Under the pieces are notes generated by a model. The model was not told the DNA's origin. It did no database searches and worked only from the letters and a program-made list of their open reading frames with translations. A DNA stretch of 64,000 nucleotides from Botryllus schlosseri (lineage: Eukaryota). The DNA lies in contig CM119377.1 of assembly GCA_051294905.1 (NCBI GenBank), positions 22,134,001-22,198,000 of the forward strand, given 5' to 3'. This document shows, piece after piece, positions 2,369 through 55,833 of this stretch. Both the position numbers and the translations under genes were made by a program. Within the stretch, counting starts at the first letter, position 1. The number at the start of each line of letters is the position of its first letter.

Positions 2369-2588
2369 CCATTTACGCATAATGCGATTATACAACACGC
2401 TGACTCTGCTTTGTCCGGAAACTGAGTCATCTTTAATCACAGCGGCCACTACGAATAACGACCTCTTTGCGGCGTATATGAGCACCACAACATTAAGCTC
2501 GATGACCAACTGAAAGGAAGCCGTGAGACCCTTACGGAAACTCCATGATCGCATCGCCCAATTATGACGAAAGTCACTCCGGTTGTAA
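2369..2588 (-). CDS. GPCR paralog 1, coding exon 3 (ECL1-TM3-ICL2); later exons not found, presumably left of the window
   Basis: TTTTTCAG|T YNRSDFRHNWAMRSWSFRKGLTASFQLVIELNVVVLIYAAKRSLFVVAAVIKDDSVSGQSRVSVLYNRIMRKW |GTAAGT. 220 nt, phase 2->0, same length as paralog 2. Confidence 0.9.
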
Positions 2589-4653: not shown

Positions 4654-4844
4654 TTTTGCAAAACTCCGCCCGCAATGAACCCATCATCAAAATGATAACG
4701 AGTGTGTAGTATTTCATAAAATGCAATGATGCTGAAGCTAATGACCGAGAGGAGGCAGCTCAGCAGGTAGACGTATATTCTGTTTTGACGCAACGTTGCC
4801 CAGTTACAGACAATTGTCAGAACTAGCAGACTGTTCCATACAAT
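4654..4844 (-). CDS. GPCR paralog 1, coding exon 2 (TM1-TM2-ECL1)
   Basis: TTGCAG| IVWNSLLVLTIVCNWATLRQNRIYVYLLSCLLSVISFSIIAFYEILHTRYHFDDGFIAGGVLQ AA|GTAAG. 191 nt, phase 0->2; 56/63 aa identical to paralog 2 by hand count. Confidence 0.9.
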
Positions 4845-18048: not shown

Positions 18049-19912
18049 CAGTGGTTCTTAACCTTTTTTCTTCCAGCGCCCCCTTTCAAAAATTATCGTG
18101 CTCCAGCGCCCCCCAACTTCATATTGTGAGGAAAGTAATAAAGACAATGAGTAAGAGGGAGGGCCGTAAAAGCACTTCGTCAGCCCCCCTATAAACTATT
18201 GCCTTGCGCACCCATAGCGTGATAAACCAAACTTCTGAGGGCTTCGCCCCCACGAACCCCATAGCGTGATTTCGATGGTCAGCAAAGTTTGTGTGGCCTG
18301 GTCGCCAAAATCTCCTATAATGCATGAATGAATAGGTGGTAATTACATATATAAGTCGCTATAAACTTTTTATCCTCCCAGCCCACGTAATCAGATTTAC
18401 CAGTAGAGCTGAGTGAACTGTTGTATAGGAAAATAAAGGGCCCGTAAGTAATAATTAAACATATTCGGGCGTGCCCGTAGGTAAAATTATTCGTTACCAG
18501 GGCCGTAACAGCACTTCGTCAGCCCCCCCCCCCCCCCCAAACAGAAAATGTTGGTCCTGGGCCCCCATCGGGTGATAAACCAAACTTCCGGGGGACTTCA
18601 CCCCCAGACGCCCATTCGGCTGTCCGAATGCTGATACTAGTTATTTACATTAGGTGTCCATTTACTGAGGCAGCTAAGCTCACCTAGACGCGCGAAGCGC
18701 GGAAAATTGCACTAATTAATGATTGAAATTGGTCAATATGATCGGGAATTGCATGTATATTGAGATCAATTTTTATCCTCTCTCTGCTCACGTAAACAGA
18801 TTTACCGGTAGAACTGAGTGATGTGTGTTTGAAAAGGTAGGGCCCCTCAATAATAATTATACATCTTCGGGCGTATACCCGTTGGCAGGAACGAAACGTC
18901 ACTTCGTCAGGCCCCCGAAAAACTTGGGTCTCGGGCTCCCATAGGGTGATAAACCGACCGCCCCCCCCCCCCCATCACGTTGTTCGCTTTTGCCACGGAA
19001 TCAGCTGTACTGTTTAGCGAGCCAGTGCGAAGCGCGAAAACTTTCGATAATTCATGCTAAAGTCGGTCAGTAAGACCGGGGATTGCAAATATATTGCTAT
19101 CAATTTCTTGTCCTCTCTGCTCACGTTACCAGATTTACCGGTACAGCTAAGTGAGATGCAATGTTCCCTCAAAGCTGCGCACGTGCGCAGTGCTGACACC
19201 GTCTCTGCGCACAGAAAATCTACGTTGCTCACAACAAATCCGAAGTTATGACCTTTTTTTAGTCGTTACGCATTGTTGTCCAAGGATCAGCGCAGTGAGT
19301 TGTTGAGTGTGCACAGACTCATCAAAACTTGAAGCGAACATTGTGAGGTGTCTTGGAAACGGTAGGGCCCGTAACTAATAATTAAACATATTCGGGCGGG
19401 TGAACTCGTTAATATGACTTCGTTGCATGATGTTATTTCGTGACCTACTGTCTGCAATATCAAAAAATATAGAATCGCCTAACAGGGATATCACCCAACA
19501 GGAATATCCCTGTCGCCCAATCGTACTAAACTAAGAGACACACACGATTTCAAATTGGTATTTCTTCACTGGCATATAATTTTTCTCTGGCAGATGGAAT
19601 TCGTGTTCTTGGGTTCAGATTACCAAGACAGGAACATTCGGGGACAGTCATTTAGGCGGCCATGGACAATTAAACCTATATGTACTTTGAAGGCTATATA
19701 TAACGAAGTTTTCGGTGTTAATTTGCTCTGAATACTCATTAAGGATATGTCCTATCACCACATCATCTACTGCAAAGCCATTTTTCTCCAGCTCCCCCCA
19801 TACCGCCCCCCTGAGCCCAGCGCCCCCTATATCGCCCCCTGAGCGTTTCCGCCCCCCTTCAAAATCGCCAGCGCCCCCTGGGGGGCGCTGGGAGCAAGGT
19901 TAAGAACCACTG
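18049..19912. mobile_element. Composite non-autonomous hAT (Charlie/Buster-like) element
   Basis: TIR CAGTGGTTCTTAACC/GGTTAAGAACCACTG; perfect TSD ATCTAAGT; interior carries three tandem units of the 29330-30618 family. Confidence 0.9.
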
Positions 19913-24455: not shown

Positions 24456-24712
24456 TTAGGTGCCTCTTCCGTCCACGACATTGTTCGGTTGCTTTGTGCT
24501 TTTTCGTTTCATTCGTCCGCTTGCAGTGCCTTGCGAATGTCGTTTTTTCGTCGAGTAGTTTTTGATTGTAACGCTTGTTAAGCACGGAAGCTTGAATATC
24601 ATGCTTTTGCAGGCCTGCTGCAGCCCGCCCATGTACTTGATCAATATTACGGGCATGATTAAGATGTGTAAAAACGAAACGATGAGAGTGGGATCGATGT
24701 TCGGTATTGGCC
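24456..24712 (-). CDS. GPCR paralog 2, coding exon 8 (TM7, helix 8, C-tail, stop)
   Basis: TCCTACAG|(G)PIPNIDPTLIVSFLHILIMPVILIKYMGGLQQACKSMIFKLPCLTSVTIKNYSTKKRHSQGTASGRMKRKSTKQPNNVVDGRGT*. 257 nt. Total CDS 1368 nt (455 aa); possible ATTAAA poly(A) signal at 24369-24374. Confidence 0.85.
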
Positions 24713-25454: not shown

Positions 25455-25596
25455 CTTCCGGCGCAAGTACATCCACGACACTTGCCGTTATGAATGGAGT
25501 CACTGACAAAATCACGATCACGGTAAGTGCAATCAGAAGCTTCACTGTGGAGTGAAATGACACATGCGTGCAGCAGTTCTTCAATCCGCAATCCGT
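25455..25596 (-). CDS. GPCR paralog 2, coding exon 7 (TM6)
   Basis: GTTTTCAG| TDCGLKNCCTHVSFHSTVKLLIALTVIVILSVTPFITASVVDVLAPE G|GTTTGT. 142 nt, phase 0->1; P6.50 retained. Confidence 0.82.
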
Positions 25597-27624
25597 CTGA
25601 AAACAGCTGTTGTTACCGTGGCCGTATGATGTAAATCCAGGGTTGTAATGACTTGAGTTATGGCTCGACTTGAGCGGCGATTGTTGGTTGATTCAACTTG
25701 ACCCGAGTCATTTCGTTAAATGCCAAAGATGACTCGACGAAGTCATATGACTCGAGACTCGGGCGGCCGAGCCAGGCATTTCAGTGTAACTTTGAAGAAA
25801 AGTGAAGTTCCACATTATTGGTATTTCCTCTCTCAGTAATCGCACATGAATATTAGGGCCATAAATTATTCGGAATTTAAAAAATTAGCATATAAGGAAT
25901 GGAAGGAAATCTATATCACCCAAGCAGGGTTGTAAAAATTGGGCTGAATATTACTTGAACTCCGACTCGAGTCTTAACACGATGACTCGGAATGGACCAT
26001 CCGCACCCTGACTTAGACTCGGACTTGACTCGGTAATGAATTGAAAAGGACTCGACTCAAATCTATGAAAGTAAGATTGAATTGCGATTCGTAACCTTGT
26101 GACTTGGTTACCACCATGCTTAAAACCAAGGGGGTTGCCGTTTTACCCATCCTGATGTCAGATTCAGCGAAACCATTTTCCTATTCATGACGCCATAGTA
26201 GAATCGAGACGCTCTATCTGGAAATCTTTCTTTTCGTTCAATGAGCCAGATAATGAACCTGTATTGTTTATTGTAATTCCCAAGAAGCCATATCATATTG
26301 TCAGTCAACTTTATTGTTATGTCATGGGGGCACGAAATCGAGGTTCCCCACATGGGATTCGTGCTCCTAGTCATATTGTCAGTAATAAAAGCTGTTATGA
26401 TGTTGTAGCACCCGCACTAATCAAGTCATTTAGTCAGACTTCTTGTGTCACTATGCGATCAGTGCATGCTGTGCATCACAATATCGCTTTCCACTAGATA
26501 TCGAATAGTTGAAGATTTGATATTTGTGCGTTGACTAACGGTTCGAATTGGAATATCGAAAGTACTGATTACACACGTCAACAAAATGATTTATTTTTTG
26601 GCAGAACAGCAAGGAATGTTTTCTGTTTTTTTAAGGCTGCTGATTACTATTATTATAAATATGACATTACTTTTGCAAGATTGGATCTAGTTTACAAGAT
26701 AGGTATGCTCCTGAATAAGTCCAAATTTCTGTATTTACCCATAAATATTTCACATAGTAGAATAAGTAAATTATAACCTTTTCGACGTCTATAATGCGGA
26801 TAAAAATATAATTGACTATGGCGAAGTGTCACGTGGCTCTCGGTTAATCAATCAATCTGAACTCGTCCTGGTGCGAGATGTTTCTTTGTCAAAAAAGCAG
26901 TCTTGTCAAGCCTAAACATCGTACTTTTGTACAAAGAAAATATATTTTCTCCTGTACCAATCGGTCATTCTACCAAGATGAAAGAGAAGTATGAGGCTGT
27001 CAAATTCGACGTTTAAAAGCGTAACTACAACACTCATATATGGCTGATTTCTGTTGACTTTTACCTAGTCAATTTTCTGCTGGCCAACAAAATGGATATA
27101 TACCAAGTAATCTGTGTTTTTAAGTTTGTGGGACGTGAGGACGAGAATGAAGCACTGGCGCAAAACGTACTGGCCAGAATGAACCAGTCTTCCAGTTTGA
27201 ACAGTTGTGTAACCAATGAGCAATCAGGACCGTAACTGCCCCCCCCCTCCCCAAACCCCCAAAGAGGTGGGCGAGCTCGAAGGAGGGGGGGCAAAATTAC
27301 TTCGTGAATTAACATAAATCATATAGTCTTTTTCGGAAATTTATGCAACAGTTTCATTTTTTACGCGCTGCTCGCGCTTTAATGTTGTCGAATATCTTGA
27401 TTAATGGGTACCCTTACCCAACAAAAAATAAGCATGATTTATAGAAATGAGCACTTCGGTGTCGGCCATTACCGCACCACGACGCACCAAATCATATTAA
27501 TTTACAGGCCATGTGACATACGACTCCGAGAAGTGTGCCAGAACGATCAGTAGCGAAAAGACCTTGGCCGAAAAGGACTGCCCTTGTGCTGACCGAAAAC
27601 TTCTATATATACAATACATATATG

Positions 27625-28901
27625 CAGAGGTGGTCAAAGTAGTCCAGAAAGCTACTCAAGTAGACGCAGAAGTAGCGACGAAAAAATCTACTCAAGTACG
27701 AGTAGAAGTACTTCTTCCAAGAGCCATCTAAAACTACTGGAAGTAGAAGTAGAATTGACTGACTTTAAATCTACTCAAGTAAGTAAGTAGTTTTGAAAAC
27801 AGTCTTAATTCGTTCGCATGGACTGTCAAAAGCTGGAAATTGAGCTACGCGAAAGGTGCACAGACTTGATTCGTATTGATGCATCCGCCCAGGAGGTATC
27901 AATTTTCGACAGAATAAACACTCTTTCGCATCATGGGATGCAAATTATAGTATTGATATGAAAATGCGATACTAACTATTTTTTTACTAGAAAACCCCAT
28001 TTTAGACAATATCATGGCATGGCGCCCTATACCCCATATTATAAGGCACCAAGTTTAGGCGAAGAGCAATACGGAAAAGCTGTATCGGATACGGTTTCAA
28101 CACTTTGCGCGCGATTAGTATACGTTAATAACAAATATTATGGATCGTAAAATTTATATTTAGTATAGCTTTATTTTAGGAAAATAGAGGCATTACTACA
28201 CTTGCTTTTATGCTTCAACATGTATGTTCTGCAGACAAAAGAACTGAAAGTAATTAGAACGCAAAGTATTATACTCGGGATTGAAAGTGAAATATACAAA
28301 TACTACTTCTAAAAAGCGGAAAATATATTTCATGTCTTTTGTCCATAAAGCTTCAAAGGTGAAATGCTAAAACAGGAGTAACGTTGAAAAAGCCGGATTT
28401 TCCAGATCAGCAGGACACGTCATGGGCTGCTAGAATACGATACAATACGTAATTGCTGGATTGCGAAACGGTAGTTTCAAACGTTATGGGAGGCCATATT
28501 TACTTTGATGAAATATTTGATATGGGCGACAATGCGGTGTGAGTGGAACCAAGCAACCCGGTACCTAAATACTTTCGTGAAAACATATTTGGCACTCCAT
28601 AACTACTGCGCGCGAAGCACAACAAAATTTCTGGGCTTTACTTGACTTTTATGAATATTAAAAGTTGGTACTCCGTGAAAACAGCCCCGAAATTCCTCAG
28701 GCTATCTTTCGTATGGGGGGATTAAACTACTCCTACTTGACAAACTGAAAAAAGCGAAAAGTAAGTAAGTAGATCACAAAATATTACGAAGTAGAAGTAG
28801 AAGTAGAGAAAATCATATCTACTTGATTAAGTACCAGAAGTAGAGGAAAATTACTTGAGTACTTCCAAAAGGTAGAAGTACTTCGTTACTGGCCACCTTT
28901 G
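27625..28901. mobile_element. hAT-type element with AGTAGAAGT subrepeats (nested)
   Basis: Termini CAGAGGTGGTCA/TGGCCACCTTTG; TSD CATATATG/CATAAATG. Confidence 0.8.
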
Positions 28902-29329
28902 CATAAATGTTTAATTGTCCACAGGCGCCTAAATAGCTGGCGCCGAATGTTCCTGTCCTGGCGATCTGAGCTCCACAAGATAAATGCCATCTCGAGGGAA
29001 CATTATTTACCGGTAAAGAAATACGACTTTGAAATCGTGTACGTTTTTTAGTATAGTACGTTTGAGCGATTTCAATATCTTTTGAAATAGCAGATAGGAG
29101 GTCACGAAATAGCATCATTTAACGAAGTCAGTAAACCAACGGGTACGCCCGAAGAAGTTTAATTCTATTATTCAGGGGTCCTGCCTTTTCCAACACACCT
29201 CACTCAACTGTACCGGTAAATCTGATTATGTGAGCAGAGATAGGATAACATTTATAGCAACCCTGATATGCCAAATCATTAATTATAGATATACATGCAT
29301 GAGTATATGTAATTGGTATTGCATATAGG

Positions 29330-30618
29330 CAGGGCCGTAACAGCACTTCGTCAGCCCCATAAAAAAAAAAAAAACTTTGGTCTTGGGCCCCCCACAAGGT
29401 TATAGACCTAACTTATGGGGGGCGTCGCCCCCCAGACCCCCCTCCGGCGATACACTCTTTGCCGCTATTTACCATATTCATTGGGACTTTGTTTAGTGAA
29501 TCAGCTTTTGTCGCCTAAGCGCGGAAAAATTTATAGAATTCATGATTGAATCGGTCAGTATGATCGGGAATTGCCTATATTGTTATCAATTTTTATCTTC
29601 TCTCTGCTCACGTAATCAGATTTGCCGGTAGAGCTGAGTGAGGTGTGTTTGAAAAGGTAGGACCACTCCATTAATAATTGAACATCTTCAGGCGTATACC
29701 CGTTGGCAGGAACGAAACAGCACCTCGTCAGGCCCCCAAAAACGTGGGTCTTGGGCTCCCATAGGGTGATAAAACGACCCCCCCCCATCTCGTTGTTCGC
29801 GTTTGTCACGAAATCATCTGTACTGTACTGTGAGCCAGCGCGAAGCGCGAAAATTTTCGATAATTTATGATAAAATCGGTCAATCAGATCGGCGATTGCA
29901 TATAAATTATGCTATCAATTTATTTTCCTCTCTACTCACGTAATTAGATTTACCGGTAGAGCTGAGTGAAGTGTCTTGAAAACGGGATGGCCCGTAAATA
30001 ATAATTAAACGTTTTCTGGCGGGCGGACCCGTTGGTATGACTTCGTTACATGATGTTATTTCGTGATATCCAGTCTGCTATATCAAAACATATAGAATCG
30101 CCCAAACGTAGGCTTCTAAACTAACAGACGCACACGATTTCAAATTGGTATTTCTTCACTGGCATAATTTTTTTCCCAGCGGGATGGTATTTGTCTTGTG
30201 AGGTTCAGATTGCAAAGACAGGAACATTCGGCGTCAGTCATGTAGGCGCCTATGTACAATTAAACCTATGTGTATTTTATATATAGAACGCGGTCTTCGG
30301 TCAGCATAAGGGCATAGACCTTTTCGGCCAAGGTTTTATCGCTGCCGATCGTTCTGGCACACTTCTTGGAGTCGCATGTTATAGGGCCTAAAACTTGATT
30401 GTAGGTCTTGGTGGTTCGTAGCGCGGTAATGGCCTAATAGCCAATAATAAATATAAATGGCTTCTTGAATTCGCGCGCAGCGCGAAAAAATTTTGAAAAA
30501 TTGGCATAAATTTTCAAAAAATACTTTATGCTTTATGCTAATTCACGAAATAATTTTGGGCCCCCTTCGAGCTCGCCCCCCCCAATTGGGGGGTTTGGGT
30601 GCGGCAGTTACGGTGCTG
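29330..30618 (+). mobile_element. Non-autonomous hAT element (CAGGGCCGTAAC family)
   Basis: Termini CAGGGCCGTAAC/GTTACGGTGCTG; perfect TSD CATATAGG; internal ~377-bp tandem unit. Confidence 0.88.
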
Positions 30619-30658
30619 CATATAGGCCAATGTATATGGCTGTCTGTATAATGTATGA

Positions 30659-31655
30659 CAGGCGTCGCCAACTCAAATCGGGTCGCGGGCCACTTTTCAA
30701 ATTTCGCAGCGGCCGCGGGCCGCATGAATTCAATATCGGTATAAACTAGGCAACCATCGTTTTGAAACTCTACGTCAGTACAACGCCGTGCTACTTAATT
30801 TAGGCAATGGGCGTAGTGACCACAAAATAAGTAATATTTTATCAAAGGAATACAAATACAACAAAAAATCATTATCATTCATTTCATTTTATTTTGAAGT
30901 CTGAGCTGTGCACGATACTGGAAACGATTTTCAGCGAATAAGGCCTCGATATTGGGGCTAGCGAGATACGTTACTAGCTGAAATACCATCTCCATGTAAA
31001 GTTTGATATTGTGGGGAAGCCCTAAGCCAGTGGTTCTCAAACATTTTTAGACACCCCCCCCCCCCCCTTAATGATACTGAAAACTTTCGCTCCCCCCTCA
31101 TCGTCATATCACAAAATGCAACCAGAATGCTAGCAATCCCAACAGATAGTTTGATGACATTGAAGGTTATGACTGTTGATATACACAAAATATAAATTTG
31201 ATGTAAATCGCGCGGGGCGCGAGAAATTTTTCAGTTGACCGCAGCTCCGCGCCCTCTTAAGATGCTTTCACGCCCGCACAAGAGGGGCGCGCAGTCCAGT
31301 GAACCACTGCCGTATGCCGTTTTATAGGCGTCTCGATCTTGGCAGTGTTTTGGCCATTGCACGTCAAGGCAATATGCCCAGCCCATTCATTTCAGCAGAT
31401 TATTCTTCCTCGATGGAATGCTGTTGCCATCTCCAAAGCCGTTTTTGCTAGTAACGAATGGTGATGTTGGGCAAAGGAGAATAAGCTAAGCTATAGCTTA
31501 TTTCGAAACAACAACAACTACAACAACAATGCTTGAAACTGCATTTCAAAATCGTTTTCTCAGTTTTCTTCTGAAATCTCAAATCACGTCGCGGGCCGCA
31601 AAATATGACCTCGCGGGCCGCATGCGGCCCGCGGGCCGCGTGTTGGTGACCCCTG
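30659..31655. mobile_element. hAT-type element, hosting MITE 31028-31309
   Basis: Termini CAGGCGTCGCCAAC/GTTGGTGACCCCTG; perfect TSD ATGTATGA. Confidence 0.88.
31028..31309. mobile_element. Charlie-like MITE (nested); homolog at 38418-38736
   Basis: CAGTGGTTCTCAAAC...GAACCACTG; TSD CCCTAAGC/CCGTATGC; body aligns with 38418-38736. Confidence 0.75.
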
Positions 31656-31812
31656 ATGTATGAGGTGACCAGATGACTTGAAGGCCTGTTGGTCGTATCG
31701 CTGGCCACGATTTCACAGCATTACTTTATTGCACCTGGAAATAAACTTCTGTCTGTCTGTCTGTCTGTCTATCTGTCCTATTAGGTCTTACATACTAACT
31801 CACTATTATTAC

Positions 31813-31895
31813 CTCCGACCCAAGTCTCGATGATATGTCGTGTTCGGATACAGACCATGAACGAGCCTCCTTTGCTTCAACAGGGTTCCGCGGCT
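31813..31895 (-). CDS. GPCR paralog 2, coding exon 6 (ICL3); alternative donor would extend it to 31804
   Basis: Follows a 67-nt intron: TTGTTCCTTGCAG|(E)PRNPVEAKEARSWSVSEHDISSRLGSE|GTAATA, or +VII|GTGAGT. Both donors are phase 0. Confidence 0.72.
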
Positions 31896-31962
31896 CTGCA
31901 AGGAACAAAAGCAGGAAATTCGTAACATGAGTAGCTCGTGTGTAGCTATTATTCATATTCAC

Positions 31963-32157
31963 CTGCTGAAGTTCGAGGAGAGGAAGCTGCTTGATATTGC
32001 CTTATCACAAAAACCAGGGTAACAATCATATACGCCACAGAAGCAAAATAGATTGATCCCACCACAACGAAGAAACTCTTCCTCATTGGCAACCAGACAC
32101 GTGAACAAATGACGGCTGCATCGTCTGTGTAAACAAGGTGATGCTGCGAACACGCTT
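31963..32157 (-). CDS. GPCR paralog 2, coding exon 5 (ECL2-TM5)
   Basis: AACGCAG|(E)ACSQHHLVYTDDAAVICSRVWLPMRKSFFVVVGSIYFASVAYMIVTLVFVIRQYQAASSPRTSA G|GTGAAT. 195 nt, phase 1->1. The acceptor is weak but is the only AG downstream of an in-frame TAA. Confidence 0.82.
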
Positions 32158-33201
32158 CTGCGTTGCAGGTTTATTTAGCTCGGAGGTGGGCGAACAGAAT
32201 CCGCACCTAAATTGGCTCTGCTGAAATTCCTCGCGCTGTCGTTGCAGCAATTTAAAAATGCCGCTGAAATTGCGTCCAAAATCTAGTCTTATTTGAACTT
32301 CAATATACAATTGAATAGTATATTCATATTGAAGTGAACCCGAATACTTTCGGCTGACACCTCGTAGAGGGTAATCGTCAGCAACTAGCAGAGAATTGGA
32401 AAGAATATGGTATGTTTTATGGAAATTGAGGATAATTAATTGTAAATAATTTTAAAATATATACATGCTTGCCACATGAAATAATTAGGTAACATTGCCT
32501 AGAACGTAACAGTATATGACCAACATCATCTCAGTAAAGATATATTGTAGAATTCTAGTGATTTGTGTCTGTGATTACAAGAGCCCGACAACGGCGACCA
32601 AGCATGTTAAAGTGGTTTCGACTGCTTAAAATCCCAATACCGCGTAGCGGAAATGTTCGAGTTATATCACCAGTCACCATTTAAATGGGTAACTACCGGT
32701 AGTTGTTTAGCAAGCCAGGAAAGTTATTATAGTATCAGTGAAGCATTTAGTTATAAGACTGATGCTTGGTTTGTGGCGATTCAGTCACAGTATGCGATGG
32801 CAGGTAAAGAAAGTCTGTAATAAGCTGGTCATAGCAATCTGAAAAGCGAAATGTGGAAGAAAGGCTTTGTATATAGCTTTGACAGCCCGGCTACTGGACA
32901 GGCACAACTAATAACCGCCATAAATGACGCGAAATGACGCGTGGATGTTCGGGCGTTTTTTAGTTAATTTGATCAATACCAAAGCAGCATTATTATAAGT
33001 GGGTCATTCGGGTGTCGAGTAGGAAAAATTACTTTTTTTCTAGTCTACGCAACAGGATTTTCCGTAAAGAATTTTAGAATCAGCAGTTTTCTAGTCTAGC
33101 AGTCTAATTTTTGTGATTTGTAAATAGTGTCCAAATATGGTAACCCTAACGACATGGGTTATGGCCTTTGTAGTCCATACAAATGATGATGCATCACTAA
33201 C

Positions 33202-33358
33202 CTGATATGCACGTTGAGATCAACTTGAAGCTGGGAAGACATTTGCAGTGTTCGAGACAGTTCCACTCGAATGCTGTTGGGATTGAAATACCAATAGGAA
33301 GAAGCCACGTCACTGTTATTATAAGAGCTGCCTCGCGATCTTTCGAAATTTTGGCTGT
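33202..33358 (-). CDS. GPCR paralog 2, coding exon 4 (TM4, start of ECL2)
   Basis: GCTAATACTTCAG| TAKISKDREAALIITVTWLLPIGISIPTAFEWNCLEHCKCLPSFKLISTCIS G|GTTAGT. 157 nt, phase 0->1; W4.50...P and WNC motifs. Confidence 0.88.
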
Positions 33359-33911
33359 CTGAAGTATTAGCATAATGACGAATCAAGGATAATTAGGCTC
33401 ATGTAATTATGATCAAAGTCACAAAGATGAAGCTTGTCCAGTCCTTTTCGCATTTGATTCGGTTTACTGGCGCCAAATTTACTTCAGCACTCATAGTTCA
33501 GTTATTCCCAACCTCGGCTCTTATTATTCCAGGAAAATCCCACGAAAATATAATAGACAGTTATAGTTTGGTTCTGTGAATAGTTCTCGTCAATTGCTGT
33601 ATGGCAATGCTGAATCAAACTAGAAATGTCTATTATATATTTTAATTTGGTTTTAGCCGCTCATTGCAGTTTCTGAAAGCCGGGAAGAGAATTTCTGCAG
33701 ACTACAGTACTTATTAACTAGCATTAAGCGCATGGATGGATACCCTTCAGATAATTTGATATATCTTGAATTTTAATGGGGATAGACCTTTATAGATTAT
33801 TTCTGTATTGAGCACATCCCCATACAATTTTATTAGCATCAAAATGACGGCTACTAGTCAACTATAAATTGCAATAACTAAAATATGCATACGGTGTATA
33901 CTACAACTTAC

Positions 33912-34131
33912 CAACTTGCGTATAGTGCGATTATACAACGCCATAACTCTGCTTTGTCGGGAAACTGGGACATTTTCAATCACCGCGGCCACTACGAATA
34001 ATGACCTCTTTGCGGCAAACACGAGCACCACAATATTAAGCTCCATCAGCAAATGAAAGGAGACCGAGAGGGCCTTACGGAAACTCCATGATCGCATCAC
34101 CCAATTATGACGAAAGTCAGTCTGATTGTAA
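33912..34131 (-). CDS. GPCR paralog 2, coding exon 3 (TM3, long ICL2)
   Basis: CTTTTCAG|T YNQTDFRHNWVMRSWSFRKALSVSFHLLMELNIVVLVFAAKRSLFVVAAVIENVPVSRQSRVMALYNRTIRKL |GTAAGT. 220 nt. Confidence 0.9.
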
Positions 34132-34527
34132 CTGAAAAGGAAGGATGGATTTTTTTTACTCGAGTACCATTCTGAGGATGATCTTTCTGCTGCAATGACA
34201 AGTTGCTCAACCCGGTATGCCGAAATCCAATTCCACTTTCATACAACTCATATAGTCTTGTAGCAGATCAAAAGCAATCATTATCACCATCCACCCCATG
34301 TCAGTAGGCTACCCAAGTGTCACGGGAATGGGTGGATTCACACCTTTAAAACGTACAGACCAAACTATAAAATCCTATTGTTTTCATTCAAAAGTAAATT
34401 CTAATGCCATGTTGAATTGACTTTTACTCCACAAGACACTCACTTCACAACCAATTTCAATTAGGGTATGTATTATGATTCATGAAGTCTACAAGCCGTG
34501 CTTGTTACCAAAAAAAATATGTCTTAC

Positions 34528-34718
34528 TTCTGCAGAACTCCGCCCGAAATAAACCCATCATCAAAATGATAACGGGTGTGAAGTATATCATACAATGCAA
34601 TAATACTGAAGCTGATGACCGAGAGGAGACAGCTCAGCAGATGTACATATATCCTGTTATGGCGTAACATTCCCCAGTTGCAGACAATTGTCAGAACTAG
34701 CAGACTGTTCCACACTAT
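34528..34718 (-). CDS. GPCR paralog 2, coding exon 2 (TM1-TM2)
   Basis: TTTCAG| IVWNSLLVLTIVCNWGMLRHNRIYVHLLSCLLSVISFSIIALYDILHTRYHFDDGFISGGVLQ AA|GTAAGA. 191 nt; class A N1.50 in WNSLLV. Confidence 0.9.
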
Positions 34719-34904
34719 CTGAAATGGACGATATTGTAAGAAATTATAACAGCACAGTCCAATATATCAGGACTCAGGAGTGACTAACTTCCGTTATATT
34801 GGAATTGACCGAAATGTTTTGCAAGACCGGCGATCGATCATTTGGTTAGAGAGAAGTGTCACTGATGTACTTTTTTTCTGATACTTGTACCGTGGAATAA
34901 TTCA

Positions 34905-35635
34905 TGTTACCTGTTTGGGGTTTATCTAGGCTACTCCTCGCCATCTGATCCGCCTATGCTGTGCGTAACAAAAGCCTAGAGGAGGGATTACCAAGATTTC
35001 AATCTCGTGGATCCCTTCGGCGAATATTTGAACCGAAATTACCCCCTAAGAAAAAGTAGCCCGGTGACTAAAAATGTCATCTTTCCCGCACAAGCAGTCG
35101 TTGACTAAATTCACCGATTTAGCTTAACGTCATGTATTTTAAATCGATGAATTTGGCATATTTGTTCTTGGCCGGGAAGACGTTGACTTGAGAAAAGAGA
35201 TGAACAGTTTCACATGACTTTTACGAGCGTAAGCAATTTGGTCGAGAGGCAGTCGCGTGACGCACAAAATCGTCTCGCAAGCCGCAGTTTTGTTAAATTT
35301 GGGCTGGTTTCAAAAACACACTGGAAACGAAAACGGTAGATTTTAAATAGCATTTAAACATACCGGAAGCTATAAATCAGTCAAAAAGCACATTCATATG
35401 CAATAGTTTGGCCATAAATGAGAAGCTTGATGAGTCCATAGGTGTACCTTCCATTATAACCCGACAGTCAACCCCCCCCCCCCCCCTTTAGTGGGGAATC
35501 TACGGTTGGGAACCACTTGGCCTTGATCGAAAGTGGGTCGTGGCTACAAGTCGGCAGATCAGGAATCCCCTGAAATCGCCTTGGTGTAATATGACCAAAA
35601 CAGTCGAAACACCATGACTACCAAACCAACCATAA
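34905..35635 (+). mobile_element. Headless SINE family A copy split by a hAT MITE (34982-35519)
   Basis: The SINE body resumes after the MITE; degenerate TSD GCCTAGAG/GCCTTGAT. Confidence 0.6.
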
Positions 35636-36281
35636 GAAAAGTAAATGGTCGTTGGCACACCTGAACTAATCTAATTTGTTACTTATGGCATGTTACTATG
35701 GTATAGGTATGTACGGACCATGATTTTTTTTTAGAATGCGGGTCCAATCCTGTTCGATAAAATGAAATCCGGATCCAAAAATTTTATGCACAAGTTTGAG
35801 CATCTATTTGCTCCTGTCGTCGATATTTTATAATCACACCTCGTCAATGCATTTTGATTTTCTATTAGTTATTTTTCGAAATGCTGAAGTCAGCTGAGTC
35901 CAAGTTCCTACAAAACATCGAAGTAAACGAACATAAAGTCACTTCCATGCACTAGAAATTTAGAATCCCGTCCTGATCCGGATCATGCAGTCGGGAAAAA
36001 TGTGAACCCGGATCTTGGATCCCGGAACCCGAAACTTGCCGGATTCTTGTCCGGTTGTAATCAAAAGTCATGATCCTGTAATTGTGTACAATGTACATCT
36101 CCAGTCTGGTACTCTTGGTGGCGCCCAAAATTGATATGGTTTACTGAGTGCAGTTAAAAGCCGACAATGCATTGTATCGTATGTTGCTTCATTTCTCTCC
36201 TGAATCTTTTGACAGCTTTACAAACCCAAATCAAGTGCTTGTATATTGTTTCAATACTATTTCCATATAAATGCAACTCAC

Positions 36282-36404
36282 CACAAATGCCGTGAAAGAC
36301 AGAAACAGGGCAACATATTGGCTTCTAGGATCCTCAGTCTGGCACGTGATTCCATTTGGAAGTACTGTCGTGGCGGAATCATATTTTATGGTGGTAATAT
36401 TCAT
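36282..36404 (-). CDS. Atypical class A (cannabinoid/EDG-like) GPCR paralog 2, coding exon 1
   Basis: ATG at 36404 with an in-frame TGA 6 nt upstream; MNITTIKYDSATTVLPNGITCQTEDPRSQYVALFLSFTAFV |GTGAGT. 123 nt. Confidence 0.85.
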
Positions 36405-36693
36405 ATAGCATCACTCTTTGTTACAAGTGATTGTTCTGAAATATTTGTGTGCAATCGATATGCAGATGTGGATTAGGTCTACAGCGGGATACACGTTGAA
36501 ACGAGCGGCAGCTCATTTGAGGGACCTATAATTCAAGTCAGGGTAGGTTCAATTTGATTTGAATGACAAATCAAAGATCAGGCTAATAAAACCCATGGTT
36601 GCGGGTTAACTACGATGATTCAAATATAGATCGCGCCACTTTATTCTCAAACGGTTAAAACGTTACTCTTCAAAGTGTCACTTAAATGAACCG

Positions 36694-41496: not shown

Positions 41497-42504
41497 TGGA
41501 AATGACTGGGCTTAACGTTCATTAAAAATCTGTTTGTCAATTTTGGTGCTATATATGTTGCTATCACACACAAAGGTGTCGTCGGAGGCGTTACGCGTGA
41601 ATATTACATCCGCCACCTGCCCACCACCTATCTTTATGGAAATGGGTTCCAGCAATCGTTTATATCAAATCGACGGAGCGGATTTCCGAGACGCGACTGC
41701 GTACTGATACCGAAACTTTATACATACTATGATATTATCTCCACGTAGAGTAATCTTGTTGCTATTTATCACTACCCTGTGAGTAATATTTCCACAAGAC
41801 AGATGACGGTTACTTGATAATCGAGATAAATTTCGACTGAAACTTGCGGGGGTCCGCGAGGGTTCGTGATGGTCTAATAGGGGTCCGCGAAGACAAAAAG
41901 TTCGAGAACCAATCGTTGCTGCCGTGAGCTCAGTCGAAAGTGTGCTCCTATGGATTTAGCAGCTTGTCGAGATGAATGTATTGAATAATTATCGAAGGAG
42001 AGTGCTTCTATGTTGTGTACAGGGTCTATATTGGTTGTACGAAGAAATATGTGATATGAGAAGGTGAGTTTACCGGTAGGATGTGTAGATACGTACCAGA
42101 CGGCATGCCGGTATGATGGTACTGCCATGCAGTAATCTACACTCTGCAGTAGCAACCAGTCGTTTTGTTATGTATGCTCGCCAGTTGTGGTTATTCTATC
42201 TTACTATGCGATGAGTGTTTTGCGTCTGGCAACGATATTGCGATTAGGCTGACTCAGTTGCACATGTTTCTACAGCAGTCTGTTTTCTGCATACCTGATA
42301 AATCACTGCTTGTGATCACAGGGCTGCCTGCTATTCACTTATTCTGGTTCAATGTGTGTGTCTGATTGAAGGACTGCTACAAGTTATTTCATAACCTTGT
42401 TATCCTTGTATATACGTAGTTGATGTTAATTATTTGCATTTGACATTTTAACCTAGAATTCCATGTCCTGTGTTGTGATTATCATGTATCAAATGAGTAC
42501 CTAG

Positions 42505-42931
42505 CAGGGATGAGCGGATTTGAAATTTCTATGTCCTAATCCAATCCAAATCCGAACCTTCAAATCCAAATCCAAATCCTAATCCATAACTTTTTCATAG
42601 TCAAGTCCATGTCCAATCCTAATCCAATTGCAACTGGAATTTCAGAAAAAATACTAATTTATGCAATGGAGGGATTCGAAAATTTTCTTTCACAACCAAC
42701 GATCCACTTGATTCAAGATAACTTAGTAACCATAAGTACATTAATAACTGATCTGAATAAAGTTTGTCGCCATTCGCCACACGACATTTCAATCTCCCAG
42801 AAAATATGTAAATCCCATCCAAATCCTAATCCGTTCTGAAAAAAATGTCTAATCCAAATCCAATCCAAATCCGACAAAATTTCACAAATCCTGTTTTTTC
42901 AAAACCTAATCCTAATCCATGCTCATCTCTG
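42505..42931. mobile_element. hAT-type MITE, AATCC-repeat family
   Basis: TIR CAG(G/A)GATGAGC/GCTCATCTCTG; perfect TSD GTACCTAG. Confidence 0.92.
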
Positions 42932-45900
42932 GTACCTAGTTGGTTGATAGAAGCTGGTAATTTATTCCTGCAACACTATTTCATTTTATCAACTAAAATG
43001 AGTTCAGATTCACATTATATTGATGCATGCATTTTTACTACATAATGGTGTCTTTTCAATCTTACTACATCTGTTTACAGAAATTGTACTCTATAATCCT
43101 TTCCACTAGTAAAAAATCAGGCCAGTTGTTGATAACAGCCTACATCAACATCAATTGCTGATGTACTGCAAACATCTGGTATGTCCATTTCCATTCATTT
43201 CTAATCTTCATTTTAGTATTACTGCTGTAATTTCATTCAGTGGGGCAAGTGAAAACTCGATGGTCGCTTTGAGGAGCAATTTTCGGGAAAGGGGGAAACA
43301 TATTCATTTACTCCTAGTTGAAATGCTGCATTTGCACAAGATAGGACGTCATACTAGCAGAAAATGTTTCTCGCATCCAACGCAGAGAATAGGCCGTGAT
43401 AAAGTATAAATTTTTAGCTTCTTTGTTGACCATACTCATCTGTGTATCACTGTTGACAACCTGCCAGATATTGAAAAAGTTCACTACTCTGATAGTTTGA
43501 TTACTGCAGCAGAATAAGTTGAAGCAATGATTGGTTGAAGTGAAAACATCAGATATTGTGAATTGTGGTGTATCTTTGCATGAAGTAAAATTCCTTATGG
43601 CATATTAAATTTCAAAGGCATTGCTGTAACATAAGCTTTCAAATGTTTTAATATTGGGATTTAGAAACCACTGCGAGAGACAAATGATGTGAAACCAGCT
43701 GATGTGTAAACTAGCACTGCTACGTGATCATTTTGCGAACTTTATGGCGGCACAGTTGTGAGTCAACAGAGGCTGTGTGTGCTGCTGCAATAATGAAGGA
43801 CATTATGCAAACTTTTCCAAGTTTATGATCACAAGAACCAGTTGAAAACTAGCACTGTTATTTCATGCATATGTTTTGTCTATTATGATTATTACTGCAT
43901 CGATTTAATTGGCACCGTTGTATTGCATATTATTCTTGTTTCTTTCTTCAAATGTATACATTCTGTATTTGCAGATGTTGCTTTCAAGTGTAACCATTTC
44001 ATTTTATTGTTCATCATTTCTTCGTATAACATGATTGAAAATTCAATTCTGTATTGTAAGGCACACTTGATTTCTCGGAATGATCAGGAATAGGTGACTA
44101 TTTATCCAAGGTGGTCAAAATATTCAGCGTTGCTACTCATACATTAGTATTGCTGTAAAGTTGTACTCGCCTTCAAGTAGAATTAGCAATTTCAGAGACA
44201 CATGGAAACTACTTCAAGCGTAGGAAATGAAGAAATGAAAGGTGATCAAGTAGTTTTAAATAGTAGATTTGGTTGATAGCTCGAATAGTTTTAACAGAGG
44301 TGGTCACTTTTAAATTGCAGGGTGCATATTTGTGACTATCGCAAACTGACCTGTGACACTACGAATAGGTGCAAATATTACAAAGTGCAAAAAGTAGATT
44401 AGTAATGTTGTTGCGTGAAAGTGATATAAAACCCAACCTATTGAAAAAGTAGACAAAACCTCTGAGTACTCCCTACCTGAGCTTTATATATGTCTGTCAT
44501 ATTTCAATATGTTGAAAAGAGGCATAGCAAACTGGAATGGAATCAGGGTGTACCGCTTGCAACCGTGGTTGATCGACCGCGGCAGTGTGAATATACGCCC
44601 GGTTGGTCGTCGCACGGCTACCGTACAGTGATCGCGTATAATCGCGAGTCGTGAATGTGTGAATTGAGTCTTGCGATACGTGCGGTACGCGCGAATTTAC
44701 CGTGCGAACCGGGTATGTGTGAATTCGCCTTTAGAACGAACGACCGCAACTAACTATAGATTAAATTCCAAAGCAACTTTAATTATTTTTATTTTACTGG
44801 AATCGAATCGGCTAGCCACGTTAGCATCAGTTCAAGTTAGAAATGGAAGGGAATTCGACCCTCAAAATCCACCTTTTGGCTACGCCACTGTATGTGTAGT
44901 ATAGCCCATAGGTGTGATAGCTCTAGTCGAGCAATGGCTGCAAGAACATCGCACAACAGAACACCGGAGAACGACAGCTGTTTTCAAGTTGTTCGGCAAC
45001 CAATTCTTTTAAACTAGAACAACTCGAACCAGGATACTCGCTTTTCAGGATCGGGAACCACAACTGATAGAGCTACTCAAAGTCTGAGGGGTTCCATAAA
45101 AGGTTACTGACGTTTTGACTCCGTATATACATATCAAAACAATGTTTTATGCAGACTACTACATGTAAGATTCCCTTCCCGCTAGCTAGTCGGAAGACTA
45201 TGCAATACAACTTTACATGGAATAGAATTTCGCAAGCTCATATATCACGATTCAAAACCAATCGGAGTTCTCCGCAATATTGTCATGTTAATACTTGCTA
45301 TGACTATACGCCAACTATCCCATAACCATACTTGCATTGTCTCAAGTCATCGCATAAGCGCATGATATGATTCTGCGGGCAACCATTACGGCAAAACGAT
45401 ACGATATTAGAATACCTACATGATCTATCACGTAAATCTGTGGCAAACTAAACAAGCTACTGAACGTGTCGGTGTATAGGTCACTTCCGCAATGTTGTCG
45501 GAGTGTTGTTTGACTAATCAACTAATCTTCATATTATGCGCCAGCGACCAGGAATACATTCTCTCTATGCCAGTGGTTCCTGACCGGTGTTCCCTGAGCC
45601 AATCTTAGGGGTTCTAGTTAGGTCAAGACACTTACTGAACATCGGTGATTTACTTGATTTATTCACGTAAATGTTTTAATTAAATTATAAGCCACATTTC
45701 CTAATAACTATAGATTCGAAACGCAATTAATTACACTGAGATGGGCGCGAATGGAATTAGTACGGTAATCCAATATTTGATCGTTGAAACTTGATTATAT
45801 GCGTGGAGCTAGCCTAAACACATAACTTGGCAAACTTGATTACTCCCAAAATGTGGGAGTACTCCGTCCCTTGTCACCCTTGTCGTTTTCGTAGTTTCAG

Positions 45901-54810: not shown

Positions 54811-55244
54811 CAGAGATGAGCGGATTTGAAATTTCTATGTCCTAATCCAATCCAAATCCGAACCTTCAAATCCATATCCACATCCTAATCCATGACTTTT
54901 TCATATTCAAGTCCATGTCCAATCCTAATCTGATACCAGCTGGAAATTCAGAAACAATACCAAGTTATGCAATGAAGGGATTCGAAAATTTTCTTTCACA
55001 ACCAACGATTCACTTGATTCAAGATAACTTAGTAATCACTAATCATAAGTACATTAATAACTGATCTGAATGAAGTTTGTCGCCATTCGCCACACGACAT
55101 TTCAATCTCCCAGAAAATAGGTAAATCCAATCCAAATCCTAATCCGTTCTGAAAAAAATGTCTAATCCAAATCCAATCCAAATCCGACAAAATTTCACAA
55201 ATCCTGTTTTTTCAAAACCTAATCCTAATCCATGCTCATCTCTG
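54811..55244. mobile_element. hAT-type MITE, AATCC-repeat family
   Basis: Near-identical to 42505-42931; TSD GCAACTAG/GCATCTAG; empty homologous site at ~32370-32410. Confidence 0.92.
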
Positions 55245-55833
55245 GCATCTAGTAGAGAATTGGAAAGAACATTGTATGTCAACAATCGTATCACAAAAGA
55301 TGACGTCACCAGCGATGAGAGCGCTTAAGCTCAATGTACTATTTTTTGATGGTACACGAACTCTTTATGTGGGCACAGACTTGGTTGGCGTATTTTGATA
55401 TAATTCGATTCGAAGGAATACAAATGAAAGTGTGAACGGTCTCTCCCGACAGCAAGAAATCTATCGTCCCGCTAATTTGTCGAGTAGGATTATCCAACAA
55501 ATGTTTGCCAATGACAGAATTTATGACCTTGTTCTGTTCTGAATCAAGTTTCAGGGGATGGGTCAAGGACAAGGGTGAGCCTTCCACAGAGCGTGATGCG
55601 CGTGTTCTAATAAGTCTAGGGACGTGCTGTTTTATGCAGTTCTGCAAACGTTGCTGCGTTTTCCTACGGAGCCACAATCACAGTGACACCTATATTCATA
55701 AACTACATTACTTTGTTGACGTGCAGGAAGAACGTCTTTGCGTGTTGCAGTGAGCAGTTGGGTTGTCGTAAAAATAAGCCTATCCGCAATTGAGCAATTG
55801 CAATCACGATGTTGCGTTCCGAACGAACAGTAC

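What the first reader, a model, noticed from the sequence alone, without database searches (positions are those of the whole stretch)
33912..34131. Class A activation microswitches are lost, yet the replacement is conserved
Seen: no acidic residue at the TM2 D2.50 position (LLSCLLSVI). The D/E-R-Y position reads A-A-K in ungapped register with LPA1, or K-R-S with a 2-residue gap. CWxP reads SVTP, and NPxxY reads MPVIL. The replacement AAKRSLFVVAAVI is identical in both paralogs. ICL2 is about 40 aa, unusually long. Established: these motifs form the Na+ pocket, ionic lock and G-protein activation path, and their loss typifies atypical or scavenger receptors and some chemoreceptors. Inference: constitutive, arrestin-biased, decoy, or modulatory heterodimer function.
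Basis: partly seen in the sequence, partly recalled or inferred. Interest (0 to 1): 0.72.

Follow-up and report, generated by a model that had tools for sequence, protein, structure and literature searches.

The report
Sea-squirt receptor family without class-A switches
The stretch is exon 3 of an intact eight-exon receptor gene from a small sea-squirt family related to the cannabinoid/lysophospholipid receptors; the family has replaced all the usual class A GPCR activation motifs yet evolves under purifying selection.

Summary
The sequence facts hold. Window 33912-34131 (minus strand) is exon 3 (TM3 and a long ICL2) of an intact 8-exon, 444-codon 7TM gene. TM2 has no acidic residue (SCLLS). 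No D/E-R-Y exists in any register. CWxP reads SVTP and NPxxY reads MPVIL. No alternative exon restores these motifs.

The gene is one of ten paralogues in this genome. Five close copies are all intact, with dN/dS of 0.19-0.53.

New here:
- The family is homologous to the Ciona cannabinoid-receptor homologue CiCBR in TM4-ECL2 (hhalign E 1.8e-10) and at the start of TM3. CiCBR keeps all canonical motifs.
- A Ciona gene filed in 2008 as "Other Rhodopsin" (ci0100136241, with cDNA and ESTs) is a relative. It lacks the same motifs, so the loss predates the Ciona/Botryllus split.
- AAKRS is conserved only in the five-gene subgroup. Older paralogues and the Ciona relative read D/E-N/S-A/T-x-F-V-(S/G)-R, so K-R-S is a later charge reversal.

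The decoy, arrestin-biased or heterodimer reading is untested. No reads lay on the exons in the bulk RNA runs sampled. I could not fold or search the full spliced protein.

This is a diverged orphan receptor family of moderate interest.

The parts
36282..36404 (-). Gene A exon 1: start codon, N-terminus with an N-glycosylation site (MNIT), first half of TM1
   Evidence: ATG, GTGAGT donor in phase 0, conserved in paralogues A-E
34528..34718 (-). Gene A exon 2: second half of TM1 (N1.50), ICL1, TM2 (SCLLS, no acidic residue), ECL1
   Evidence: AG/GT sites; same 191-nt length in all eight cluster members; SCLLS invariant in 8 of 8 aligned copies
33912..34131 (-). Gene A exon 3, the finding itself: TM3 (WSFRK, MELN, AAKRS) and most of the long ICL2
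33978..34016 (-). AAKRSLFVVAAVI, at the cytoplasmic end of TM3 in place of D/E-R-Y
34614..34640 (-). LLSCLLSVI in TM2; Cys aligns with D2.50 of CiCBR
33202..33358 (-). Gene A exon 4: end of ICL2, TM4 (W4.50), WNC and the start of the cysteine-rich ECL2
   Evidence: Pfam 7tm_1 E 0.004; S1P3/S1P2 E about 0.02; CiCBR hhalign E 1.8e-10
31963..32124 (-). Gene A exon 5: CSRVWLP and TM5 (no proline). The acceptor at 32124 is the one conserved in all paralogues. An upstream acceptor at 32157 would add 11 residues in gene A only.
31813..31895 (-). Gene A exon 5b: serine-rich ICL3 segment
   Evidence: found through paralogues B and C; phases fit
25455..25596 (-). Gene A exon 6: TM6 with SVTP in place of CWxP
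   Evidence: register supported weakly by XCR1 and CiCBR
24456..24712 (-). Gene A exon 7: TM7 (MPVIL in place of NPxxY), helix 8 (YMGGLQQACK), C-terminal tail, stop codon
8322..8444 (-). Paralogue B exon 1
4654..4844 (-). Paralogue B exon 2 (TM1b-TM2-ECL1)
2369..2588 (-). Paralogue B exon 3 (TM3-ICL2, same AAKRSLFVVAAVI). Exons 4-7 lie beyond the left end of the window.

Best explanation
The stretch is exon 3 of a functional orphan 7TM receptor gene. It belongs to an ascidian-specific family that branched from the cannabinoid/lysophospholipid (CNR/EDG) lineage of rhodopsin-like GPCRs.

The family keeps several features of that lineage:
- the extracellular architecture: an invariant basic residue in the W-x-F-R-(K/R)-G motif at the top of TM3, WNC after TM4, a five-cysteine ECL2 ending in CSRVxxP, and no proline in TM5;
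- the helix landmarks N1.50, W4.50 and P6.50.

It has replaced the whole class A activation core:
- D2.50 by Cys;
- R3.50 by Asn or Ser;
- W6.48 by Val;
- N7.49 by Met, Val, Leu or Ile;
- Y7.53 by Leu, Val or Ile.

The replacement is old, because a Ciona relative shares it. The K-R-S version in the window is a later charge reversal at position 3.49 (D/E to R), fixed on the stem of a five-gene tandem subgroup.

Inferred mechanism: the receptor probably still binds a hydrophobic or lipid-like ligand. It would transmit the change through family-specific polar residues, namely the near-invariant Glu and invariant Asn of MELN in TM3 and a His five residues before the TM7 proline. The signal would reach an intracellular partner contacted by the cytoplasmic end of TM3, the long basic ICL2 and the very strongly conserved helix 8. 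Whether that partner is a G protein is unknown.
For: Shown:
- Gene A has an 8-exon GT-AG model giving an intact 444-aa ORF.
- Five paralogues at 59-85% amino-acid identity all keep intact ORFs with identical exon phases. Pairwise dN/dS is 0.19-0.53, with dS above 1 between the two subgroups.
- Regional dN/dS: helix 8 0.03, TM1 0.10, ECL1 0.11, TM2 0.14, the TM3 motif 0.14, TM6 0.15, C-terminal tail 1.0.
- There are seven hydrophobic segments. K+R counts are 28 on the inside and 10 on the outside.
- The genome holds ten members with an exon-4 match; the next best hits are at E of about 5e-4.
- Motif states across the ten members are given.
- Homology to CiCBR: TM4-ECL2 E 1.8e-10; the start of TM3 E 1.1e-4; SDLLS aligned to SCLLS; CWMP aligned to SVTP.
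- Homology to Ciona ci0100136241 in four collinear segments: E 1.5e-6, 2.6e-5, 2.9e-4 and 2.9e-4. An unrelated Ciona GPCR used as a control gave 0.64 and 0.68.
- That Ciona gene reads DDSTYFVGR, VCSPF and ICPCLLLKY, and is listed with a cDNA and ESTs.
- The best PDB matches of the TM4 exon profile are S1P3 and S1P2.
- The tree makes the KRS subgroup monophyletic (100/99) on a long stem.

Inferred: the lipid-like ligand and the rewired polar network. These rest on my own knowledge of R/K3.28 in S1P1, LPA1 and CB1, and on the Na+-pocket positions 2x50, 3x39, 7x45 and 7x49 given in PMC6954041.
Against: - No RNA reads lay on exons 1, 3, 4 or 5 in four bulk RNA-seq runs, of which 6-13% was read. 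A few partial reads lay on exon 2.
- At exon level, Pfam 7tm_1 is reached only weakly and only by exon 4 (E 0.004-0.02, below the gathering score).
- The profiles of exons 2, 3, 5 and 7 find no GPCR in the PDB.
- Exon 3 found nothing among 1.84 billion representative proteins.
- The TM3 register rests on pattern matching, not on a structure.
- dN/dS reaches 0.53 between the youngest pair. One paralogue has a stop codon, and one copy is a 3' fragment.
Confidence: 0.7

Rival explanations
1. One reading: a non-canonical regulator. The protein would be a decoy or scavenger, a constitutively active or arrestin-biased receptor, or a silent partner that modulates a canonical receptor (for example the true cannabinoid-receptor orthologue) by heterodimerising.
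For: All G-protein activation microswitches are absent. ICL2 is long and basic, ICL3 is serine-rich, and the tail is rich in K, R, S and T. These could serve kinases or arrestins. A better match to the CiCBR TM4-ECL2 segment lies elsewhere in the genome, at C6:27520469, so a canonical cannabinoid-receptor gene probably exists as a possible partner.
Against: There is no direct evidence. To my knowledge, known decoy receptors keep D2.50, CWxP and NPxxY. Ten paralogues with conserved ECL1, ECL2 and upper TM3 look like ligand-binding receptors in their own right. Other 7TM families lacking these motifs, such as the bitter-taste receptors, still couple to G proteins (own knowledge).
Confidence: 0.15
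2. A lineage-specific chemosensory receptor family. The tandem duplicates would detect environmental or conspecific cues in a group whose chemoreceptors are unknown.
For: The genes lie in a tandem cluster of at least eight copies plus pseudogenes. dN/dS is moderate. TM5, ECL3 and the N-terminus are variable. Reads were absent or very few in the sampled bulk RNA. Tunicates lack OR, V1R, V2R and TAAR orthologues, and their chemoreceptors are unidentified (PMC7776563).
Against: The family has only about ten members. ECL1, ECL2 and the top of TM3 are among the most conserved parts, whereas in odorant-type families the ligand-binding pocket is usually variable (own knowledge). The Ciona relative has ESTs from many libraries, which does not suggest expression restricted to rare sensory cells.
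Confidence: 0.1
3. Decaying or non-functional gene copies, or a 7TM protein that is not a GPCR, whose similarity to receptors is residual.
For: No reads lay on most exons. Pfam does not recognise most exons. One paralogue carries a stop codon and one copy is a fragment.
Against: Five intact 8-exon ORFs persist although synonymous divergence exceeds 1. dN/dS is well below 1 and falls to 0.03 in helix 8. The family is conserved as far as Ciona, where a cDNA exists. Homology to CiCBR is strong in TM4-ECL2.
Confidence: 0.05

Closest known systems
CiCBR, the Ciona intestinalis cannabinoid-receptor homologue (ci0100149095; Elphick et al. 2003; sequence taken from the supplement of PMC2396169)
   Same: Both have S-W-x-F-R-K-A at the top of TM3. 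Both share TM4 with W4.50, and an ECL2 that begins WNC(V/L)(Q/E)HC-x-C and ends CSRV-x-x-P with five cysteines. hhalign gives E 1.8e-10 for TM4-ECL2.
   Different: CiCBR keeps D2.50 (SDLL), DRF, CWMP and NPWLY, and its D3.49-to-W4.50 spacing is 28 residues. This family has none of those motifs. It has three extra residues in the outer half of TM3 and about 21 extra in ICL2. TM5 to TM7 are no longer alignable with confidence. A better match to CiCBR lies elsewhere in this genome.
Ciona 'Other Rhodopsin' ci0100136241 (Kamesh et al. 2008, PMC2396169; cDNA AK112513)
   Same: Four collinear segments (TM1-2, TM3, TM6, TM7-H8) align with E values from 1.5e-6 to 2.9e-4. It shares the motif D-(N/S)-(A/T)-Y-F-V-(S/G)-R in place of DRY, x-S-P in TM6 and x-P-x-L-L-L-K-Y in TM7. 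TM2 has no acidic residue.
   Different: It is a single gene in the 2008 Ciona catalogue, and its published model deviates from 7TM (no clear TM4-ECL2). It has D-D-S, not the K-R-S of the window's subgroup. It was never linked to the CNR/EDG group or described further; two literature searches found nothing.
Vertebrate lysophospholipid (S1P/LPA) and cannabinoid receptors (the MECA cluster of class A)
   Same: S1P3 and S1P2 are the best PDB matches of the TM4 exon profile (E about 0.02, aligned through GWNCL). All share a basic residue near 3.28, the absence of P5.50, and an intraloop-disulfide type of ECL2 (own knowledge).
   Different: All solved members keep the canonical microswitches. Similarity outside TM4-ECL2 is undetectable at exon level.
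Atypical chemokine (scavenger) receptors
   Same: The G-protein-coupling motif at the end of TM3 is altered.
   Different: They are not homologous beyond class A. To my knowledge, atypical chemokine receptors change mainly DRYLAIV and keep D2.50, CWxP and NPxxY.

Membership tests
Rhodopsin-like (class A) GPCR, Pfam PF00001 7tm_1 | Seven transmembrane helices, N-terminus outside | tested here: met
   Seven hydrophobic segments. K+R counts are 28 inside and 10 outside. There is an N-x-T site at residue 2.
Rhodopsin-like (class A) GPCR, Pfam PF00001 7tm_1 | Match to the 7tm_1 profile above the gathering score | tested here: inconclusive
   Only single exons could be submitted. Exon 4 scores 14.8-17.2 bits against a cut-off of 30.5; the other exons score nothing. 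The spliced protein has no reference, so it could not be scanned.
Rhodopsin-like (class A) GPCR, Pfam PF00001 7tm_1 | Helix landmarks N1.50, W4.50, P6.50, P7.50 | tested here: met
   The TM1 Asn, the TM4 Trp and the TM6 Pro are invariant. The TM7 Pro is present in 8 of 10 copies; D and E have Ser.
Rhodopsin-like (class A) GPCR, Pfam PF00001 7tm_1 | Microswitches D2.50, D/E-R-Y, CWxP (W6.48), NPxxY (N7.49, Y7.53) | tested here: not met
   The states are SCLLS; KRS or (G/S)(D/E)N; S(V/T)(T/S)P; and (M/I/V/L)(P/S)xx(L/V/I), in all paralogues. No alternative exon carries the motifs.
CNR/EDG (cannabinoid/lysophospholipid) branch of class A | W-N-C after TM4 and a cysteine-bridged ECL2 ending C-S-x-x-x-P before TM5 | tested here: met
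   WNC and C-x-C are invariant. CS and the Pro before TM5 are invariant. hhalign against CiCBR gives E 1.8e-10. S1P3 and S1P2 are the top PDB hits.
CNR/EDG (cannabinoid/lysophospholipid) branch of class A | Basic residue at 3.28 at the top of TM3 and no Cys3.25 disulfide | tested here: inconclusive
   Arg is invariant in W-S-F-R-(K/R)-G and aligns with CiCBR SWVFRK. Three extra residues before position 3.39 leave the exact numbering open.
CNR/EDG (cannabinoid/lysophospholipid) branch of class A | Orthology to CB1/CB2 or to an S1P/LPA receptor | tested here: not met
   The best genomic match to the CiCBR TM4-ECL2 segment is a different locus (C6:27520469, E 3.6e-5). Family members follow at E 1e-3 or weaker. 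No full-length tree was possible.
Atypical/scavenger chemokine receptors | Chemokine-receptor homology with an altered DRYLAIV box and other motifs kept | tested here: not met
   The only chemokine-receptor match is one marginal TM6 hit (XCR1, E 0.1). All the other motifs are lost as well.
Known chemoreceptor families in Pfam (TAS2R, V1R, nematode Sr*, 7tm_4 and others) | Profile match | tested here: not met
   No such family appeared at E up to 1-10 for any exon or paralogue. This was tested at exon level only.

The most novel reading that the evidence does not exclude
An ascidian-wide receptor clade descended from the cannabinoid/lysophospholipid lineage has rebuilt the class A activation core with different residues. 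A Glu/Asn pair in TM3 and a His in TM7 would stand in for the Na+ pocket, and D-N or K-R-S would stand in for DRY. The clade would signal through a coupling mode not used by canonical class A receptors. The D/E-to-R reversal in the five-gene subgroup would mark a switch of intracellular partner. The family could also supply part of the missing tunicate chemoreceptor repertoire.
Probability: 0.2. Interest if true: 0.7.

Novelty: new variant of a known kind. Interest (0 to 1): 0.42.

Why it matters
Class A receptors are thought to share one activation pathway built on D2.50, DRY, CWxP, PIF and NPxxY (PMC6954041). This family gives a natural test of how far that pathway can be replaced. It has a close canonical relative, CiCBR, and it has been kept under selection since before the Ciona/Botryllus split.

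The result also assigns a Ciona "Other Rhodopsin" of unknown affinity, together with a ten-gene family in this genome, to the cannabinoid/lysophospholipid branch. That adds candidate lipid or chemosensory receptors in a group whose chemoreceptors are unknown (PMC7776563). Without expression or functional data in this genome it remains an orphan family of moderate interest.

Tried and rejected
- Exon 3 (73 aa) against 1.84 billion representative proteins gave 0 hits.
- ESM Atlas features for exon 3 gave no usable hit.
- Pfam on every exon of gene A, and on all paralogues' exons 3, 4 and 6, gave only weak 7tm_1 on exon 4 of A. The other weak hits (DUF2375, ABHD16_N, AtpZ, holin) are chance matches.
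- PDB profile searches with exons 2, 3, 5 and 7 found no GPCR. The hits were TrkB TM, NCX1, Fas TM and UvrC at E of 0.08-0.7, which is hydrophobic noise.
- RNA reads from four bulk runs showed no splice joints and essentially no exon coverage. The coverage peaks are a repeat in intron 4 and a poly-C artefact.
- I rejected I-E-N as the DRY equivalent, because it is not conserved even among the five close paralogues.
- I rejected the ungapped A-A-K register. It puts no class A consensus residue at 3.39, 3.40, 3.43 or 3.54, whereas a 3-residue shift fits all four.
- I rejected the upstream exon-5 acceptor at 32157, which gives 455 aa, because only gene A can use it.
- I did not run full-length Pfam, PDB or AlphaFold on the spliced protein, the search for homologous proteins (length window), or a local alignment of whole Ciona sequences. 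None of these sequences has a reference, and long sequences may not be typed.
- Literature searches for the Ciona gene identifiers found nothing.

Full report
WHAT IS THERE

The window comes from a 495.5-Mb animal genome (window = C7:22134001-22198000). Earlier notes of this scan call it a sea squirt, Botryllus schlosseri. I did not verify that.

The finding's coordinates, 33912-34131 on the minus strand, are exactly one exon. It is bounded by a ttttcag acceptor and an AAGTTG|gtaagt donor. Using the paralogue in the same window and three more upstream, I built an eight-exon model with GT-AG at every junction:
- exon 1: 36404-36282
- exon 2: 34718-34528
- exon 3: 34131-33912
- exon 4: 33358-33202
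- exon 5: 32124-31963
- exon 5b: 31895-31813
- exon 6: 25596-25455
- exon 7: 24712-24456

This gives an intact 444-codon ORF. All other paralogues use the site equivalent to 32124.

The protein has seven hydrophobic segments, an N-glycosylation site at residue 2, and 28 K+R on the predicted inside against 10 outside.

THE OBSERVATION

- TM2 (exon 2) reads LLSCLLSVI and holds no acidic residue in any register.
- TM3 (exon 3) ends AAKRSLFVVAAVI.
- TM6 (exon 6) has SVTP.
- TM7 (exon 7) has MPVIL.

A scan of all three minus-strand frames across the gene found no hidden exon with DRY, NPxxY or CWxP after a hydrophobic run, so correct splicing does not restore the motifs.

ICL2 is long. There are 48 residues from the K-R-S serine to the TM4 tryptophan, against 27 from R3.50 in the canonical relative CiCBR (my count on the sequence). 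The distant paralogues show the same excess.

THE FAMILY

Exon-level searches of the whole genome find ten members:
- five close paralogues, A-E, at C7:22.03-22.17 Mb, all on the minus strand;
- three more distant ones, F-H, at 21.95-22.02 Mb;
- two outliers, I at C7:16.16 Mb and J at C8:5.23 Mb.

There is also a 3' fragment with a stop codon, and F has a stop in place of a Trp in exon 6.

A-E all assemble into intact ORFs of 425-450 residues with identical exon phases. Nei-Gojobori dN/dS is 0.19-0.53, and dS exceeds 1 between {A,B,C} and {D,E}. Five eight-exon ORFs would not stay open at that divergence without selection.

By region, constraint is strongest on helix 8 (0.03), TM1 (0.10), ECL1 (0.11), TM2 (0.14), the TM3 motif segment (0.14), ECL2 and TM6 (0.15). 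It is relaxed in ICL2 (0.33), ICL3 (0.31), TM5 (0.42) and ECL3 (0.44), and absent in the tail (1.0).

IS "THE REPLACEMENT IS CONSERVED" MORE THAN CHANCE?

Partly.
- AAKRSLFVVAAVI is identical in A, B and C, and 10 of its 13 positions are invariant in all five. However, 12% of 13-residue windows do as well, and A and B share five identical runs of 13 or more residues. The segment is conserved like the other helix cores, not exceptionally.
- Across all ten paralogues the TM2 string SCLLS is invariant. TM6 is S-(V/T)-(T/S)-P.
- TM7 is (M/V/L)-P-x-I-L, except I-S-(L/V)-I-L in D and E. It is followed by a conserved (K/R)-Y-M-(G/A)-G-L-x-x-A.
- The TM3 motif differs between subgroups. F, G and H read A-V-G-D-N-A-Y-F-V-S-R, I reads G-V-S-D-N-T-H-F-V-G-R, and J reads A-V-S-E-N-A-V-F-I-G-R.
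- A tree puts A-E on a long, well-supported stem (100/99, length 0.76). K-R-S is therefore derived from an older D/E-N state, a charge reversal at one position.

WHAT IT IS RELATED TO

At exon level the family is nearly invisible to standard tools.
- Pfam gives only a sub-threshold 7tm_1 match on exon 4.
- PDB profile searches give S1P3 and S1P2 (E about 0.02) for exon 4 and one marginal XCR1 hit for exon 6. That hit aligns SVTP with SWGP. The other exons give nothing.
- Exon 3 found nothing among 1.84 billion representative proteins.

The decisive lead came from the FASTA supplement of the Ciona GPCR catalogue (PMC2396169).

The Ciona cannabinoid-receptor homologue CiCBR (ci0100149095) has canonical SDLL, DRF, CWMP and NPWLY. 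It shares with this family the TM3 start S-W-x-F-R-K-A and an ECL2 that begins WNCVQHC-x-C and ends CSRV-x-P. Comparing the family's exon profiles with short CiCBR segments by hhalign gave:
- TM4-ECL2: E 1.8e-10;
- the first 17 columns of TM3: E 1.1e-4;
- TM2: E 0.0097, aligning S-D-L-L-S with S-C-L-L-S;
- TM6: E 0.089, aligning C-W-M-P with S-V-T-P;
- TM7: nothing.

A second Ciona protein, ci0100136241, was filed in 2008 under "Other Rhodopsins". Its best human hit was OXTR at E 0.029, and it is listed with cDNA AK112513 and many ESTs. It matches the family in four collinear segments:
- TM3: E 1.5e-6;
- TM7-H8: E 2.6e-5;
- TM6: E 2.9e-4;
- TM1-2: E 2.9e-4.

The same profiles scored against TM3 and TM7 of an unrelated Ciona receptor gave E 0.64 and 0.68. 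The Ciona protein reads D-D-S-T-Y-F-V-G-R, V-C-S-P-F and I-C-P-C-L-L-L-K-Y, and has no acid in TM2.

The loss of the microswitches therefore predates the split between Ciona and this genome's lineage, and the family is transcribed in Ciona. In this genome the best match to the CiCBR TM4-ECL2 segment is another locus (C6:27520469, E 3.6e-5). Family members come next. The family is thus a separate branch, not the cannabinoid-receptor orthologue itself.

REGISTER OF THE DRY POSITION

That register, however, puts no class A consensus residue at the conserved TM3 positions.

A shift of three residues does fit. It places:
- the invariant Asn at 3.39 (Ser in CiCBR);
- I/V at 3.40;
- L/M/I at 3.43;
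- D/E (older paralogues and Ciona) at 3.49;
- Val at 3.54.

It also matches F-V-S of the family with F-V-S of CiCBR DRFVSV. I therefore read R3.49-S3.50-L3.51 in A-E and D3.49-N3.50-A3.51 in F-H, with one extra helical turn in the outer half of TM3. This is inference from sequence patterns; hhalign stops aligning before this point. In no register is there an Arg preceded by an acid.

HOW IT PROBABLY WORKS

Shown: an intact, selected, ancient 7TM family of CNR/EDG descent without the canonical core.

Inferred: the family keeps the upper-TM3 Arg, which corresponds to the lipid head-group contact R/K3.28 of S1P1, LPA1 and CB1 (my own knowledge). It also keeps the lid-like ECL2 shared with CiCBR, a very conserved ECL1, and a TM5 without proline. 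Together these suggest a membrane-derived hydrophobic or lipid-like ligand.

Three polar residues lie where the Na+-pocket residues 3x39 and 7x45 sit (PMC6954041): the near-invariant Glu and invariant Asn of M-E-L-N in TM3, and the His five residues before the TM7 proline. They are candidates for a replacement polar network.

Extreme constraint on helix 8 and on the cytoplasmic ends of TM3 and TM6 implies a conserved intracellular partner. Its identity is open.

To my knowledge, known scavenger receptors keep most motifs, so the analogy is loose. A chemosensory role is a second rival. It is attractive because tunicate chemoreceptors are unknown (PMC7776563). It is weakened by the small family size, the conserved extracellular face, and the broad EST record of the Ciona relative.

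EXPRESSION

Four bulk RNA-seq runs labelled with the same species were laid on 31900-36450, with 6-13% of each run read. They gave no reads on exons 1, 3, 4 and 5 and no splice joints. Run X7 gave a few partial reads on exon 2, possibly from a paralogue. Strong signal came only from a dispersed repeat in intron 4. None was listed as holding the stretch. This does not show that the gene is silent.

LIMITS

I did not type the sequence in. The Ciona comparisons used short segments copied from the paper's supplement.

VERDICT

The sequence observation is confirmed and extended.

The thing itself is a diverged, ascidian-specific branch of the cannabinoid/lysophospholipid receptor lineage with a fully replaced activation core. 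It is a new variant of a known kind. One Ciona member was already catalogued but left unclassified.

Noticed in passing
window 42496-42940 and 54802-55253: A direct repeat pair of about 450 nt, 92-97% identical and 12.3 kb apart, with no ORF over 133 aa between the copies. It may be a decayed LTR element or a local duplication.
   Followed up: partly
window 32204-32507 (intron 4 of gene A): RNA reads pile up here (to about 115x in run X7), but 82-88% of laid reads continue into unlike sequence. This is a transcribed dispersed repeat, not an exon.
   Followed up: partly
window 35396-35547: A read pile with poly-C loose ends at 35472 in all four RNA runs. It looks like a low-complexity artefact.
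   Followed up: no
window 19526-19688, 30116-30278, 59950-60112: Three copies of a 163-nt dispersed repeat, 71-84% identical. One copy lies in the large intron of gene A.
   Followed up: no
window 31963-32157 and 33202-33270 (ECL2 of gene A): With the exon-5 acceptor conserved in all paralogues (32124), ECL2 has five conserved cysteines, not six, plus one conserved N-terminal cysteine. The same WNC-x3-C-x-C...C...CSRV pattern is present in Ciona CiCBR. The cysteine module is therefore inherited from the cannabinoid-receptor lineage, not inserted.
   Followed up: partly
outside the window: C7:22008499-22017163 (paralogue F) and C7:21999452-22003693: Paralogue F has a stop codon where H has Trp in exon 6. 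A separate 3' fragment (exons 6 and 7 only) has a stop in exon 7. Both are likely pseudogenes within the cluster.
   Followed up: partly
window 25596-31813 (intron between exons 5b and 6 of gene A): This intron is 6.2 kb in gene A but only about 330 nt in paralogues B and C. It has probably been swollen by repeat insertions.
   Followed up: no
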